From Octopus bimaculoides (taxonomy: Eukaryota): a DNA stretch of 52,885 nucleotides. A program made the translations under genes and the position numbers. How positions within the stretch are numbered: position 1 is the first letter of the stretch; each line of letters opens with the position of its first letter. Location: assembly GCF_001194135.2 (NCBI RefSeq), contig NC_069001.1, positions 9,163,055 through 9,215,939 on the forward strand, written 5' to 3'. Shown here one piece after another: positions 940-52,393 of the stretch. A model generated the notes under the pieces. That model had not been told where the DNA came from. It ran no database searches and was given only the letters and a program-made list of their open reading frames with translations.

Positions 940-1022
940 TTCCTGCTGAAGATAATGCGCTCGCGAGTGCAGACTCAGCGTCTGTTTGAAATCCACCAAT
1001 ACTGGTAAGAGCTGAACTCATT
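940..1022 (-). CDS. IF paralog A exon 7 (post-rod linker)
   Basis: ttttacag|A ATG AGT...GGA A|gtaagt; 83 bp; [27 protein letters not shown]; homologous to C exon 7. Confidence 0.85.
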
Positions 1023-50000: not shown

Positions 50001-52393
50001 TATGTCTTTGTCTACCTGAACAAAGTTACATGAACTTGACTAGGTTCTCTTACCCCATCAACCATATTCTCCTGATACTGCGCCATCCGACTACAGAACT
50101 CATTGTGAGGGAAAATAGTTAACGATTTACATGAAGTCCAAATGCATCTAGATAACTTTTTTCTTCCAAACCAGTCAAATTTTATGCTGATGGAATTTTT
50201 AAATTGCCTGATAGATGGGCAAACGTCATTAATAATAATGTAAATTATTTCACTGAATAAAATTTATTGAAAGGTCGATTATTTATTTCCCTTTCTGCAT
50301 ATTAAAACACGCTCAGAAATTTCCGGACAACTTAATAGTACTTCAGAGAATTGCAAAGATTTATGCAATTAGGCTACCATCTTTCCCATTCTGAGGAAAA
50401 CTTCATAAAAAATCTGGTACCATAAAATCAAATATTCTACCATCTTTCCAACTAAAGTATAAGTACTCCCTATTCTTGTTTTCATGTTCAACAGTTGTGT
50501 TTTGGAATGTCAAGGTTGTGATCTCAGATTGTAATCATAGAAATATGCCGAACGAACTTTTTTTTTAATTTTACCTACGTTGATTTGCGACACCCAGTTT
50601 CTCGTACACTACTAGTGACTAAGAAAATAACTACAAATCTGGGAGCTAAGTCGTTTTGAAGCGTTCACATTTCTAACGAAACACCTGGTCAGATGTTTTG
50701 CCCAAGCTCAATTCCTCACTGGTAAGATCTATAATGAAAGGCATTCCAGTTGTGACAATTCCATCCTTTGTAAGGCAGTTAAATACGATTTGCGTAAGAT
50801 TTATCTGTGTTTTATAGCATGTTGGATGACTCTATTATTGTTGGCTCAACATCTGGTTTGTAGAGATGGCATATATATTAAGTGAAGAATTTGAAGAAAG
50901 ATTTTGAAGCAACCCTGCTGTCCGAAACATTGTGTGCAAACCATTGCCTCGTCGCCGTAAACTTGCTGGAGCACGCTCACTGTCTCTCTAGCAGACCTCC
51001 CAAGTTTAGCGCATAATTTTACGTTGGCTCTTTGTTCCAGCTTCCTACCCATGACAAAATCTCAGACTACAGCATACACGTGATCACAGAAACACAAATT
51101 TAACAATTTTCGAAGTAAACATAGCAATTTCACTCGGCACACTGCTTCATGAAGGGCACTGATCTCACTGCGCACGCAACCGTATGCTGCCATCATCTGG
51201 CGCACTATAGATCTAGTTCAACTTTTGATAGCACCAGATGTTTGTCAAGTACATTCTCGATATTTGCACTAAATGTCAAGCTATATCAAGATTCTCTTCA
51301 AAAATTAAAGACTCTACAAGACCGAATTCTTTTACATAATATGTGAAAGGACCAATAAGGTTTGTGCTGCATCGCAGACCAAATAAAGCATATGTGCTTA
51401 ATAGTGATATCATACATGCTACAAACATTAAAATTTTAAGGCCTGAATGTCTAAATAAAATGTTCAAATTCACTTAAGGGGGAAGGTTGTTGTTGTTGGC
51501 ACTCCGTCGCTTACGACGACGAGGGTTCCAGTTGATCTGATCAACGGAACAGCCTACTCGTGAAATTAACGTGCAAGTGGCTGAGCACTCCACAGACACG
51601 TGTACCTTTAACGTAGCTCTCGGAGATATTCAGCGTGACATAGTGTGACAAGGCTGACCCTTTGAATTACAGGCAAAACAGAAACAGGAAGTAAGAGTGA
51701 GAGAAAATTGTGTTGGAAGAGTACAGCAGGGTTCGCCACCATCCCCTGTCGGACCTCGTGGAGCTTTAGGTGTTTTCGCTTAATAAACACTCTCAACGCC
51801 CGGTTTGGGAATCGAAACCACGATCCTATAACCACGAGTCCGCTGCCCTAACCACAGGGCCATTGCGCCTCCACAATGGGGGGAAGGTAGAGAAGTTTAA
51901 TAACTACAATAAAGAAGCACAGAAATTAAACATTAAAAGCAAATTTCACTCACTGTTCACTCAAATCTTCAACTAATTCTTCAAGCGTTTCATTTTTGGA
52001 TTGTATTTCTGAGAGTTTCTTATCATTCTCTACTTGGCGCGCTTTCAAGTCATCCAGTTGATCTTCGTATAGTTTCTTCATTTCATCACATCTAAAATCA
52101 ACCTTAATTTCCAAGCGGCCTTTAAGATGTTTGTTTTCAGCATCTACGACACGTATTTTTTCAAGGACGTTGGCAAGCTTTATATTCAATACTTGCATCT
52201 CTTTTTTTTCTCTTTCGCCCTTATCTTTCATGTCAGCAACCTGTTTTTGGCCATGTTCTGCTACCACTCCAGTGGGAAAGACCGCTGGAAGTGTTTGGTG
52301 ATGAGCTTGCATACGAATGCCATCCCTGGCATGTCTTCTCCTTCGTCTCACTTGTACCACTGCTTTACCAGCTTTTATTCTTTCTGGATTCAT
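38042..52393 (-). CDS. Cytoplasmic intermediate filament protein with lamin-tail domain, paralog C (11 exons, 558 aa)
   Basis: Exons 52393-51954, 48106-47920, 46783-46688, 45614-45450, 43456-43337, 42427-42207, 41558-41476, 40922-40819, 40411-40301, 39005-38892, 38077-38042 sum to 1677 nt. GT-AG, open frame; rod ends [21 protein letters not shown]; C-terminus EYSSVVIKINS*. Confidence 0.93.
38892..39005 (-). CDS. IF paralog C exon 10 (LTD)
   Basis: tctttag|ATT TGG GGA...GGC AAG|gtaaga; 114 bp. Confidence 0.87.
39699..40102 (+). mobile_element. Dimeric (tandem) SINE insertion
   Basis: 16-bp TSD AGAAACAATAGAACGA; empty site in paralog B at about 20827. Confidence 0.88.
40301..40411 (-). CDS. 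IF paralog C exon 9 (LTD)
   Basis: atcgtag|AGT GCA CCA...GTG AAG|gtaagt; 111 bp. Confidence 0.87.
40819..40922 (-). CDS. IF paralog C exon 8 (LTD start)
   Basis: tttactag|GT AAA ATG...TCG AAG|gtaaga; KMTLSRSTTGVVGIIELATDGTYIKLEDVGKSSK. Confidence 0.88.
41120..41314. repeat. Near-perfect fold-back (arms about 88 bp), MITE-like
   Basis: CTGTTGTGTCTG...AATTTCCACTTATTTC is mirrored by GAAATAAGTGGAAATT...CAGACACAACAG. Confidence 0.88.
41476..41558 (-). CDS. IF paralog C exon 7
   Basis: ttttccag|G ATA GGC...GCA GCA A|gtaagt; 83 bp. Confidence 0.85.
42207..42427 (-). CDS. IF paralog C exon 6
   Basis: tttatag|GTA GCA...AGC AG|gtaaat; 221 bp; [15 protein letters not shown]. Confidence 0.95.
42679..43064 (-). 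mobile_element. Long tRNA-derived SINE, full length
   Basis: 13-bp TSD CTGTATCATGATG. Confidence 0.9.
43337..43456 (-). CDS. IF paralog C exon 5
   Basis: ctccatag|ATA AGG ATG...ACT GAG|gtaaga; 120 bp. Confidence 0.85.
44188..44703. repeat. (AAT)n / gap / (AAC)n microsatellite block
   Basis: Direct reading. Confidence 0.95.
44273..44617. other. Assembly gap (N run) in intron 4 of C
   Basis: N bases. Confidence 1.
44704..44925 (+). mobile_element. Non-LTR retrotransposon fragment (CCHC knuckle, R4/Dong-like)
   Basis: KCRMCGERGETVCHIVCEC...YKRRH...IHWELC, embedded among (AAT)n/(AAC)n. Confidence 0.7.
45040..45220 (+). mobile_element. Penelope-type terminal repeat (second family)
   Basis: Follows (AAT)n; contains CCTGATGAAGGCTG...CAGCCGAAACGTTG. 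Confidence 0.55.
45092..45137 (+). ncRNA. Minimal type I hammerhead ribozyme-like motif in a Penelope-type terminal repeat
   Basis: GATAC-CTGATGA-A-GGCTG(loop)CAGCC-GAAA-CG-TT-GTGTT. Stem I is GATAC/GTGTT with two G-U pairs, stem II is 5 bp, and stem III is the palindrome AACGTT. Confidence 0.6.
45450..45614 (-). CDS. IF paralog C exon 4
   Basis: atttgtag|GAG ATC...GAG GAG|gtaaag; 165 bp. Confidence 0.9.
46420..46500. promoter_or_regulatory. GATA-motif cluster in intron 3 of C
   Basis: TGATAG at 46420; AGATAA at 46424, 46443 and 46495. Confidence 0.35.
46688..46783 (-). CDS. IF paralog C exon 3
   Basis: ctctccag|AAA TTA...AGA GCC|gtaatg; 96 bp. Confidence 0.92.
46977..47351 (-). mobile_element. 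Long tRNA-derived SINE, full length
   Basis: TSD ACAGTTGTAT. Confidence 0.9.
47920..48106 (-). CDS. IF paralog C exon 2
   Basis: ctgttag|A TTA AGC...AGA ACA|gtacgt; 187 bp. Confidence 0.92.
48850..49985 (+). mobile_element. Decayed mariner transposon (internally deleted)
   Basis: EKTEYHAVIKYLHLKG...DDPRPERP...KVSARWLHRLLT...LFHHDNTPAH...HPPYSPDLA, with stops and frameshifts. Confidence 0.88.
50890..51130 (-). mobile_element. Mariner 5' fragment (HTH)
   Basis: MGRKLEQRANVKLCAKLGRSARETVSVLQQVYGDEAM. Confidence 0.7.
51488..51877 (-). mobile_element. Long tRNA-derived SINE, full length
   Basis: TSD GGGGGAAGGT; absent at the homologous intron-1 site in A and B. Confidence 0.9.
51954..52393 (-). 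CDS. IF paralog C exon 1 coding part
   Basis: aaaaATG; GAA CA|gtgagt; ORF 51950-52393. Confidence 0.93.

What the first reader, a model, noticed from the sequence alone, without database searches (positions are those of the whole stretch)
940..52393. Tandem array of three fast-diverging lamin-tail intermediate filament genes
Seen: three head-to-tail minus-strand IF genes at about 18 kb spacing share the same exon phases. Introns, 3' UTRs and intergenic DNA still align, so whole units were duplicated, yet the proteins differ heavily. Established: vimentin rod exons are 61/96/162/126/221 bp, protostome IFs add 42 aa to coil 1b (61+126=187, seen here), and the Helix aspersa non-neuronal IF gene has 11 exons (also seen here). 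Inference: this is a lineage-specific expansion of an atypical IF subfamily, possibly for a specialised tissue cytoskeleton. The array may extend beyond the window.
Basis: partly seen in the sequence, partly recalled or inferred. Interest (0 to 1): 0.75.

Follow-up and report, generated by a model that had tools for sequence, protein, structure and literature searches.

The report
Octopus tandem array of intermediate-filament genes
The window holds three neighbouring copies (one cut off by the window edge) of a larger, octopus-specific, fast-evolving tandem family of cytoskeletal intermediate-filament genes; they are real, mostly already annotated genes, and their relatives' proteins turn up in octopus skin mucus.

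Summary
The window is Octopus bimaculoides DNA. It carries three head-to-tail minus-strand cytoplasmic intermediate-filament (IF) genes, with start codons at 15578, 33758 and 52393.

- **Structure.** All three share intron phases (2,0,0,0,0,2,1,0,0,0) and rod exon sizes of 187/96/165/x/221 nt. B and C have 11 coding exons. A has only exons 1-7 in the window; its four tail exons lie beyond coordinate 1.
- **Gaps.** Both N gaps sit inside introns (A intron 5, C intron 4) and break no reading frame.
- **Protein type.** These are protostome "long coil 1B" IFs with a lamin-type tail and no nuclear-localisation or CaaX signal.
- **Larger array.** The three genes belong to an array of at least 7-9 genes, also present in O. 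sinensis and O. vulgaris, where each has an ortholog. A neighbour-joining tree places the whole array in an Octopus-only clade, separate from the conserved cephalopod IF genes.
- **Rate.** Evolution is fast but still constrained: dN/dS is 0.39-0.71, and proteins are 59-84% identical between species, against 94% for a conserved IF gene from the same O. vulgaris gene series.
- **Copy B.** B has lost the rod-end "YRKLLEGEE" assembly motif.
- **Expression.** Orthologous proteins are detected in O. vulgaris skin mucus, which points to an epithelial role.

This is a new member of a known kind (lineage-specific IF gene clusters), and A and B already have RefSeq models.

The parts
940..15578 (-). Gene A, incomplete in the window. 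It is O. bimaculoides '70 kDa neurofilament protein-like', XP_014776796.1. Coding exons 1-7: 15133-15578, 10790-10976, 8999-9094, 8157-8321, 5484-5624, 3774-3994, 940-1022. Exons 8-11 (lamin-type tail) lie beyond coordinate 1.
   Evidence: Translated exons 1, 3 and 6 match P0006 at 100%, and my junction reading reproduces its sequence. All introns are GT-AG. Pfam Filament scores 140 bits for P0006.
19299..33758 (-). Gene B, complete, 11 coding exons: 33349-33758, 29787-29973, 28857-28952, 27711-27875, 26834-26947, 24427-24647, 23235-23284 (RefSeq donor; a weaker ancestral-position donor would give 23199-23284), 21595-21698, 20972-21082, 20084-20191, 19299-19325 (with stop). The product is 530 aa (542 aa with the long exon 7). 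The rod-end motif is degenerate: 'IAACQALFEAENS'.
   Evidence: Model. The 530-aa product is identical to XP_014776795.1 (P0017). Pfam Filament 101 bits; LTD 30.5 bits, below the 34.3 cut-off. The motif loss is visible in alignment A2.
38042..52393 (-). Gene C, complete, 11 coding exons, 558 aa: 51954-52393, 47920-48106, 46688-46783, 45450-45614, 43337-43456, 42207-42427, 41476-41558, 40819-40922, 40301-40411, 38892-39005, 38042-38077 (with stop). It keeps '[14 protein letters not shown]'.
   Evidence: Model. Pfam Filament 106 bits. The only public model found is a 249-aa fragment holding exon 1 (P0048 = A0A0L8GZD8). Identity is 80% to O. vulgaris P0014 and 75% to O. sinensis P0008.
4684..5358 (.). 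Assembly gap (675 N) inside intron 5 of gene A. It directly follows a truncated SINE copy (4324-4661).
   Evidence: Exons 5 and 6 on either side join in frame exactly as in the RefSeq protein.
44273..44617 (.). Assembly gap (345 N) inside intron 4 of gene C.
   Evidence: Exons 4 and 5 join in frame, and the protein is colinear with its orthologs across the junction.
15747..15755 (-). TATA box (TATATATAA) 177 bp upstream of the ATG of gene A, at the head of a stretch conserved between the three units.
33931..33939 (-). TATA box (TATATATAA) 181 bp upstream of the ATG of gene B.
52553..52560 (-). TATA box (TATATAAA) 167 bp upstream of the ATG of gene C.
18156..19298 (-). Region downstream of the gene B stop codon (likely 3' UTR) that still aligns with the equivalent region of gene C (36911-38041). 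It holds several AATAAA/ATTAAA signals.
   Evidence: BLASTN 18156-19641 against 36911-38408, 68% identity over 1595 columns. Signal positions. The poly(A) site itself is not determined.

Best explanation
**What it is.** The window is a slice of an Octopus-lineage tandem array of cytoplasmic intermediate-filament (IF) genes. It holds members C, B and the 5' two-thirds of A, all transcribed on the minus strand.

**How it arose.** The array grew by duplication of whole units, each carrying a TATA promoter, 11 exons and a 3' end. This happened after octopods separated from the sampled decapodiform cephalopods and before O. bimaculoides, O. sinensis and O. vulgaris diverged. tRNA-derived SINEs inserted independently into the introns afterwards.

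**What the proteins are.** They are protostome 'L-type' IFs with four parts:
- a short basic head;
- a lamin-length rod, with 42 extra residues in coil 1B;
- a linker;
- a lamin-type Ig-fold tail.

They carry no nuclear-localisation signal and no CaaX box. They should therefore form, or co-assemble into, cytoplasmic 10-nm filaments.

**How they evolve.** Constraint is weakened but real (dN/dS 0.4-0.7).

**Copy B.** B and its orthologs have replaced the rod-end helix-termination motif, which is known to be critical for IF assembly. I infer that B cannot build normal filaments alone and acts as a heteropolymer partner or modifier of filaments made by its neighbours.

**Likely tissue.** I infer that the family is mainly epithelial (skin), functionally comparable to keratin diversification, rather than neuronal as the database name '70 kDa neurofilament-like' suggests.

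**Shown versus inferred.** Shown: gene structures, orthology, array extent, substitution rates, domain content, and protein-level expression of the orthologs. Inferred: filament assembly behaviour, tissue specificity in O. bimaculoides, and the role of B.
For: - **Unit duplication and colinear non-coding homology:**
- **Exon models, phases and GT-AG sites:**
- **Match to RefSeq models:**
- **Domains:** Pfam Filament 101-140 bits. Coil 1B is 42 residues longer than in vimentin and colinear with lamin A. A profile of the tails hits only lamin Ig-fold structures (2lll, E = 2.7e-7, and 15 more). No CaaX and no basic cluster after the rod.
- **Array in O. sinensis CM016879.1, in transcription order:** 591-aa gene, C1', F', about 58 kb that I did not see, B', A', D', E'.
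- **Array in O. bimaculoides v2 (CM046621.1):** two further copies plus a divergent one.
- **Array in O. vulgaris:** eight proteins from the consecutive accession series CAI9738631-39 were retrieved as IF-family proteins (37 and 38... in detail, 38 was not seen).
- **Tree:** array clade 100%, B clade 100%, A clade 100%, C clade 86%, conserved cephalopod clade 93%.
- **Rates:** paralog dN about 0.30, dS 0.48-0.57, omega 0.54-0.63. Ortholog omega is B 0.71 (CI 0.48-0.94), C 0.48 and A 0.39. Conserved NF60-type gene is 93.6% identical between O. bimaculoides and O. vulgaris, against A 84%, C 75-80% and B 59-62%.
- **Rod-end motif:** its loss is shared by B, P0001 and P0013. Its importance for assembly is established (abstracts of PMC2289357 and PMC2119649, listed).
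- **Protein-level evidence:** the O. vulgaris skin-mucus proteome identifies B' (A0A6P7TG54, 12 unique peptides, including HGAGQDGITSSEVTEWDTSK), C1' (A0A6P7THF3, 17 peptides), and peptide groups shared by the A'/D' isoforms. E', F', the 591-aa and the NF60 proteins appear among the accessions listed under the Lamin_tail_dom term, which is enriched about 15-fold (PMC11431876 supplements).
- **A further species:** short genomic contigs from runs SRR118693xx (species unknown) carry distinct A-type and C-type first exons.
Against: - No RNA-seq was available here, so the splice junctions of C, the poly(A) sites and tissue expression in O. bimaculoides are not directly confirmed.
- Skin mucus contains sloughed cells of unknown type and comes from another species. 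The conserved '60 kDa NF' gene product is also listed there, so presence in mucus does not prove epidermal specificity.
- 'Octopus-only' rests on databases with few decapodiform proteomes and on a library clustered at 50% identity, of which only the best 150 hits were seen.
- The tree is neighbour-joining on corrected p-distances, not maximum likelihood.
- Gene conversion between neighbours could make the duplications look younger than they are. dS varies between exons, from 0.21 to 0.79.
- C's orthology is not strictly one-to-one. C-type genes come as at least two copies (C1 and C), and public models mix their exons.
- B's rod-end segment differs between species ('ACQALFEAENS' against 'AAMLAQLKDVD'). 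That fits simple decay of the motif as well as a new function.
Confidence: 0.8

Rival explanations
1. They are true neurofilament genes, orthologs of squid NF60/NF70 as the RefSeq names say, duplicated to supply the large octopus nervous system.
For: RefSeq names them '70 kDa neurofilament protein-like'. The squid neurofilament proteins are, from my memory of Szaro et al. 1991 and Way et al. 1992, lamin-like IFs with alternatively spliced tails. Public models here also show alternative tails.
Against: - The array clade is separate from the conserved cephalopod clade that holds the '60 kDa NF' gene and the cuttlefish proteins.
- Neither tail has Lys-Ser-Pro repeats.
- Orthologs are abundant in skin mucus.
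- The RefSeq names come from automatic similarity naming.
Confidence: 0.12
2. One or more copies, especially B, are decaying pseudogenes or redundant duplicates drifting neutrally, with no function of their own.
For: B has lost the rod-end assembly motif. It has the highest omega, 0.71, with an upper confidence bound of 0.94. Some exons give omega above 1, on 30-130 codons each. The ancestral exon-7 donor is weakened.
Against: - B has 11 intact exons, no stop or frameshift, and all splice sites are canonical.
- An intact ortholog is kept in O. sinensis and O. vulgaris.
- In the bootstrap, omega reached 1 in only 0.5% of replicates.
- The orthologous protein is detected with 12-18 unique peptides.
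Confidence: 0.06
3. The triplication is an assembly artefact, for example uncollapsed haplotypes or mis-joined scaffolds around the N gaps.
For: The window comes from a draft assembly with two N gaps, and SINE copies lie near them.
Against: - The units differ by 25-30% at the nucleotide level, far beyond allelic divergence.
- SINE insertions sit at different positions in each unit.
- The B-then-A order is reproduced in the O. sinensis chromosome assembly.
- Both gaps lie inside introns, with colinear exons on each side.
Confidence: 0.01

Closest known systems
Helix aspersa non-neuronal cytoplasmic IF gene (Dodemont, Riemer & Weber 1990, EMBO J 9:4083). The paper is not held in the library, so details are from my memory of the abstract.
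   Same: It is a molluscan L-type IF with 42 extra coil-1B residues and a lamin-like tail, 11 exons and 10 introns. Rod intron positions match vertebrate type III genes; here the rod exons are 187 (=61+126)/96/165/variable/221 nt. It also produces alternative C-terminal ends by RNA processing, which parallels the alternative-tail models seen here.
   Different: As I recall, Helix has a single non-neuronal gene. Here there is a tandem array of at least 7-9 diverged copies. Exons 4 and 5 differ slightly in length (165 and 114-141 nt). One copy (B) lacks the rod-end motif.
Squid neurofilament gene NF60/NF70/NF220 (Szaro et al. 1991; Way et al. 1992; from memory)
   Same: It is a cephalopod lamin-like IF, and it is the source of the RefSeq names of these genes. 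Several products arise from alternative 3' exons.
   Different: The window genes fall in a different, Octopus-only clade from the conserved '60 kDa NF' and cuttlefish proteins. They have no KSP-repeat tail. Their orthologs are found in skin mucus.
Vertebrate type I and type II keratin gene clusters
   Same: These too are large head-to-tail tandem arrays of IF genes made by whole-gene duplication. They share intron positions within a cluster, are expressed in epithelia, evolve fast in head and tail, and assemble as heteropolymers.
   Different: Keratins are S-type (short coil 1B), lack a lamin tail, and form obligate type I/type II pairs encoded by two clusters. The origin is independent. Heteropolymer behaviour is only inferred here.
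Caenorhabditis elegans cytoplasmic IF family (ifa, ifb, ifc, ifd, ifp)
   Same: This is a protostome L-type IF family, lineage-specifically expanded to 11 genes. Some members have a lamin-like tail and others have degenerate motifs. IFA and IFB are obligate partners. RefSeq calls the B ortholog 'ifa-1-like'.
   Different: It is an independent expansion in another phylum and, as far as I recall, is not arranged as one contiguous array. The name reflects similarity only.
Vertebrate lens beaded-filament proteins BFSP1 (filensin) and BFSP2 (phakinin)
   Same: These are IF proteins whose conserved rod-end motifs have diverged. They do not form classical 10-nm filaments alone (general knowledge; PMC2119801 and PMC10297038 appear). 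They are an analogue for copy B.
   Different: There is no sequence orthology. No lens expression was shown here.

Membership tests
Cytoplasmic intermediate-filament protein, protostome L-type (lamin-like) | Central IF rod domain (Pfam PF00038) above the curated cut-off | tested here: met
   Filament scores are B 101.3, C 106.5 and A (P0006) 140.5 bits, against a cut-off of 40. The match covers the full profile, positions 1-313.
Cytoplasmic intermediate-filament protein, protostome L-type (lamin-like) | Coil 1B longer by 42 residues than in vertebrate S-type IFs, as in lamins (PMC3065449) | tested here: met
   The vimentin alignment breaks into query 54-164 and 206-430, leaving residues 165-205 unmatched. 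Lamin A aligns colinearly, 47-303 against 19-279. The rod spans 347-358 aa against a 313-position profile.
Cytoplasmic intermediate-filament protein, protostome L-type (lamin-like) | Helix-initiation motif at the start of coil 1A (LNxR/K...) | tested here: met
   '[10 protein letters not shown]', 'LNIKLTTVLT' and 'LNIKLANVLE', each followed by the invariant 'AENKHLK', align with 'LNDRFANYID' of vimentin. Lys replaces the usual Arg.
Cytoplasmic intermediate-filament protein, protostome L-type (lamin-like) | Helix-termination motif at the end of coil 2B ([13 protein letters not shown]) | tested here: inconclusive
   Met in A ('[15 protein letters not shown]') and C ('[15 protein letters not shown]'). 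Not met in B ('NIAACQALFEAENS') or its orthologs ('VAAMLAQLKDVD').
Cytoplasmic intermediate-filament protein, protostome L-type (lamin-like) | Lamin tail domain (Ig fold) in the C-terminal tail | tested here: met
   A profile of seven tails hits 16 PDB sequences, all lamin tail domains; the best is lamin B2 (2lll), E = 2.7e-7. On single sequences Pfam is weak: LTD scores 30.5 bits for B against a cut-off of 34.3, and nothing for C. A's tail lies outside the window but is present in P0006.
Cytoplasmic intermediate-filament protein, protostome L-type (lamin-like) | Intron pattern shared with Helix IF, vertebrate type III and lamin genes | tested here: met
   Exon sizes are 187/96/165/114-141/221 nt with conserved phases. 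Type III sizes of 61/96/162/126/221 and the Helix count of 11 exons are recalled from memory, because the Helix paper is not held. Intron positions were not aligned residue by residue against those genes.
Cytoplasmic intermediate-filament protein, protostome L-type (lamin-like) | Self-assembly into 10-nm filaments | not testable with these tools
   This needs recombinant protein and electron microscopy.
Nuclear lamin | Nuclear-localisation signal after the rod and a C-terminal CaaX box | tested here: not met
   There is no run of three or more K/R after the rod. The C-termini are '...EIDVLVIK' and '...SVVIKINS'.
Cephalopod neurofilament (squid NF60/70/220 orthologs) | Orthology with the conserved cephalopod NF-type gene; KSP-repeat tail isoform; neuronal expression | tested here: not met
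   The array clade (100% bootstrap) excludes the '60 kDa NF' and cuttlefish clade (93%). No KSP repeats occur in the tails. Neuronal expression could not be tested.
Tandem gene array formed by whole-unit duplication | Same orientation, regular spacing, homology extending through promoter, introns and 3' flank, and further copies on both sides | tested here: met
   for the window. for additional copies in O. sinensis and in the O. bimaculoides v2 assembly.

The most novel reading that the evidence does not exclude
Octopods may have independently evolved a keratin-like system. This would be a rapidly diversifying tandem family of epidermal IF proteins whose members co-assemble. It would include a subunit (B) that has given up the universal rod-end assembly motif, and in O. 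sinensis and O. vulgaris has gained a (PQTEGESAPG)n tail repeat, to modify filament properties. Splicing between neighbouring genes (A rod joined to D tail; B-A read-through) would add combinatorial diversity. Such a system could contribute to the unusual mechanical plasticity of octopus skin.
Probability: 0.2. Interest if true: 0.55.

Novelty: new member of a known kind. Interest (0 to 1): 0.3.

Why it matters
Lineage-specific expansions of cytoplasmic IF genes are well known in vertebrates (keratins) and in nematodes. As I recall, the classical molluscan picture is one neuronal and one non-neuronal gene; PMC3065449 reports that molluscan IFs fall into neuronal and non-neuronal groups.

An array of 7-9 or more genes in Octopus, evolving several times faster than the conserved IF gene from the same gene series, adds an independent example. 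It includes a member without the helix-termination motif. It also gives a natural experiment on which rod features are dispensable for IF function.

There are practical consequences too. The database names ('neurofilament', 'ifa-1-like', 'myosin-16') are misleading. Gene C lacks a full public model. Several public isoforms join exons of neighbouring genes, which matters for anyone quantifying these transcripts or peptides.

None of this overturns current understanding. I found no paper describing the array.

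Tried and rejected
- **Word-indexed protein searches were insensitive for this coiled-coil family.** The three searches returned 9, 1 and 6 hits. Species breadth therefore rests on the exhaustive HMMER search.
- The representative search rejected my spliced model of B, so I used a profile of public orthologs instead.
- **One lookup failed.** P0010, the LTD-only model that probably represents the tail of the upstream C1 gene in O. 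bimaculoides, could not be located on a contig. The upstream neighbour of C in O. bimaculoides was therefore not seen.
- **The v2 locus does not overlap the window.** The O. bimaculoides v2 locus fetched with P0002 shows only 74-79% paralogous matches to the window. The gaps could not be closed from it, and the order A then D is inferred from isoform X3 and from O. sinensis synteny.
- **The Helix aspersa gene paper is not held** (PMC552181). Its 11-exon structure is cited from memory.
- **RNA searches found nothing.** Rfam and ARAGORN returned no hits in the window, although the interspersed repeat has a tRNA-like head.
- **Whole-gene positive selection is rejected.** Omega is below 1 in all six comparisons, and only B approaches 1. 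Per-exon values above 1 rest on 27-134 codons and are not significant.
- **Artefact and pseudogene readings are rejected** (haplotype or assembly artefact; pseudogene). See the rival explanations.
- The tail-profile hits to solved lamin Ig folds answered the domain question, and a monomeric coiled-coil model would add little.

Full report
**Source and overall layout.** The window is 52,885 bp at 37% G+C, with two N runs at 4684-5358 and 44273-44617. Self-BLASTN shows three colinear units offset by 18.2-18.8 kb, aligning at 68-81% identity in many coding and non-coding blocks. It also shows a ~385-bp interspersed repeat present about ten times in both orientations. A rough translation of the middle unit found nine Octopus IF proteins. 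One of them, O. bimaculoides XP_014776796.1 (P0006), is 100% identical to translated exons 1, 3 and 6 of the first unit. The window is therefore O. bimaculoides draft-assembly DNA.

**Gene models.** I used TBLASTN hits of the Octopus proteins as guides and read the junctions directly. This gave three minus-strand genes.
- Gene A: ATG at 15578, exons of 446/187/96/165/141/221/83 nt. Exon 7 ends at 940, and the four tail exons are not in the window.
- Gene B: ATG at 33758, stop at 19299, 11 coding exons.
- Gene C: ATG at 52393, stop at 38042, 11 coding exons.

Every intron is GT-AG, and the phases after successive exons are 2,0,0,0,0,2,1,0,0,0 in all three. B with an internal exon-7 donor (GAAG|GTGAGT at 23235) is identical to RefSeq XP_014776795.1 (530 aa). 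The donor at the ancestral position is weakened (GA|GTTGCA). C has no full-length public model that I could find, only a 249-aa fragment holding exon 1.

**The gaps.** Gap 4684-5358 is inside intron 5 of A and directly follows a truncated SINE copy. Gap 44273-44617 is inside intron 4 of C. The flanking exons join in frame. The A junction is the one used in the RefSeq protein, and the C junction is colinear with its orthologs. The gaps therefore do not affect the finding; only the intron lengths are uncertain.

**What kind of protein.** Pfam Filament is matched end to end (101-140 bits against a cut-off of 40). Against vimentin, residues 165-205 of A have no counterpart, whereas lamin A aligns colinearly. 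This is the 42-residue 'long coil 1B' of lamins and protostome cytoplasmic IFs (background in PMC3065449), and it is encoded in the 187-nt exon 2. A profile of the tails hits only lamin Ig-fold tail domains in the PDB (best E = 2.7e-7). Single-sequence Pfam LTD is sub-threshold for B and absent for C. There is no CaaX box and no basic cluster after the rod, so these are cytoplasmic IFs rather than lamins. A and C keep 'YRKLLEGEE' at the rod end. B has 'ACQALFEAENS', and its O. sinensis and O. vulgaris orthologs have 'AAMLAQLKDVD'. That motif is known to be critical for filament assembly (abstracts of PMC2289357 and PMC2119649).

**Whole-unit duplication.** Colinear non-coding alignments cover 36% (B-C), 16% (A-B) and 14% (A-C) of non-coding bases, at 78-80% identity over ungapped positions. 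About 180 bp upstream of each ATG is conserved and begins with a TATA box, at 15755, 33939 and 52560. The region after the B stop codon aligns with that of C. The interspersed repeat is a tRNA-derived SINE with target-site duplications. Its copies sit at non-homologous intron positions and are 83-94% identical, so they inserted after the gene duplications.

**The array is larger and is shared with other Octopus species.** In O. sinensis chromosome CM016879.1 the order on one strand is as follows:
- a 591-aa IF gene;
- C1' (P0008);
- a very divergent 479-aa gene, F' (P0030);
- about 58 kb that I did not see;
- B' (P0001);
- A' (P0007/P0025);
- D';
- E' (P0004/P0005).

The O. bimaculoides v2 chromosome holds two more copies and a divergent one in a locus that does not overlap the window. 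In O. vulgaris, the IF proteins retrieved belong to the consecutive accession series CAI9738631-39. Short genomic contigs from other sequencing runs (SRR118693xx, species unknown) carry distinct A-type and C-type first exons. One aligns at 79% over 1.3 kb with A and its promoter.

**Age and lineage.** An exhaustive HMMER search found 2279 relatives, 95 of them at E <= 1e-30. I named the closest ones and built a bootstrapped neighbour-joining tree of 71 sequences.
- All array-type proteins form one clade (100%), and every member is from Octopus.
- Inside it, the B (100%), A (100%) and C (86%) groups each contain the window gene plus its O. sinensis and O. vulgaris counterparts. B, F and C group together (97%).
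- The cuttlefish proteins and the conserved Octopus genes ('60 kDa NF', the 591-aa gene, XP_014778880) form the sister clade (93%).
- Chiton, abalone, oyster and flatworm IFs lie outside.
- Nei-Gojobori estimates give paralog dS of 0.48-0.57 and O. bimaculoides-O. sinensis ortholog dS of 0.20-0.28.

The duplications therefore predate these species by roughly a factor of two in synonymous distance. They do not look like ancient molluscan duplicates. Gene conversion and thin decapodiform sampling are the caveats.

**Rate.**
- Between paralogs, omega is 0.54-0.63.
- Between species, omega is 0.71 for B (bootstrap 95% interval 0.48-0.94), 0.48 for C and 0.39 for A.
- Protein identity between O. 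bimaculoides and O. vulgaris or O. sinensis is 84% for A, 75-80% for C and 59-62% for B. The B figure includes a repeat-length difference; it is 75% over aligned codons.
- The same comparison gives 93.6% for the conserved NF60-type gene.

'Fast-diverging' is justified. Whole-gene positive selection is not shown.

**Expression and function.** I could not map RNA-seq. The supplements of an O. vulgaris skin-mucus proteome (PMC11431876) list the B ortholog (A0A6P7TG54, 12 unique peptides), the C1 ortholog (A0A6P7THF3, 17 peptides) and peptide groups shared by the A'/D' isoforms. E', F', the 591-aa and the NF60 proteins appear among the accessions under the InterPro Lamin_tail_dom term, which is enriched about 15-fold. 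These proteins are more abundant in senescent animals. The family is therefore translated, and it is present in material shed from skin. My best reading is a mainly epithelial IF family, with B acting as a heteropolymer partner or modifier. That part is inference. I found no paper describing the array.

**Verdict.** This is a lineage-specific tandem IF gene family of a familiar general kind, already partly annotated, with one interesting derived member (B). Interest is modest.

Noticed in passing
window 3031-3216, 4324-4661, 5935-6319, 12544-12930, 22192-22377, 31183-31432, 42686-43065, 46978-47352, 51491-51875: A tRNA-derived SINE of about 385 bp. It has a tRNA-like head (GGCCCAGTGGTTAGGGC...GGTTTCGATTCCC) and 10-13-bp target-site duplications, and copies are 83-94% identical. 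It occurs in both orientations, always in introns, at different positions in each gene unit, so it inserted after the gene duplications. Neither ARAGORN nor Rfam calls it.
   Followed up: partly
window 19299-19325 and 15133-15578 (B exon 11 to A exon 1); L004 25364-25480; L003 59366-60519: Public gene models join exons of neighbouring array genes. XP_014776795.2, named 'myosin-16' (1137 aa), is B read through into A. A isoforms X2 and X3 carry the rod of A with tail exons of the next gene D, and O. sinensis models P0003 and P0007 do the same. This is either real inter-genic splicing made possible by identical phases, or an annotation artefact.
   Followed up: partly
window 23199-23284 (B exon 7); L001 23761-23982: In O. 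sinensis and O. vulgaris the B ortholog carries six or seven tandem copies of a 10-residue unit (PQTEGESAPG) in exon 7. O. bimaculoides B has a single copy (SQTEGESAFA), and its RefSeq model splices it out through an internal donor at 23235.
   Followed up: partly
window 10790-10976 (A exon 2): Exon 2 of A is 97% identical at the protein level to the corresponding part of another array member (P0002), while other exons of the same pair are 62-75% identical. dS also varies from 0.21 to 0.79 between exons of paralog pairs. This may reflect local gene conversion or unusually strong constraint on the coil 1B insert.
   Followed up: no
window 5440-5483, 26790-26833, 43290-43336 (just 3' of exon 5 in each gene, on the minus strand): A tetranucleotide microsatellite of (CTAT)n or (CAAT/GAAT)n type lies immediately downstream of the exon 5 donor in all three copies. 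Exon 5 is also the most length-variable and least conserved coding exon (141, 114 and 120 nt).
   Followed up: no
L002 39820-45773 (O. sinensis): A very divergent array member, F' (P0030, 479 aa, named 'intermediate filament protein A-like'). Its rod is shortened and only about 42% identical to C, but its tail is nearly identical to the C-type tail. It too is listed in the skin-mucus data set.
   Followed up: partly
window 39697-40101: A local tandem duplication of about 181 bp (39739-39917 against 39920-40101, 91% identity) lies in intron 9 of C. Related copies occur at 23800-23979 (B intron 6), 16673-16821 and 27967-28144, so this is another dispersed repeat family.
   Followed up: no
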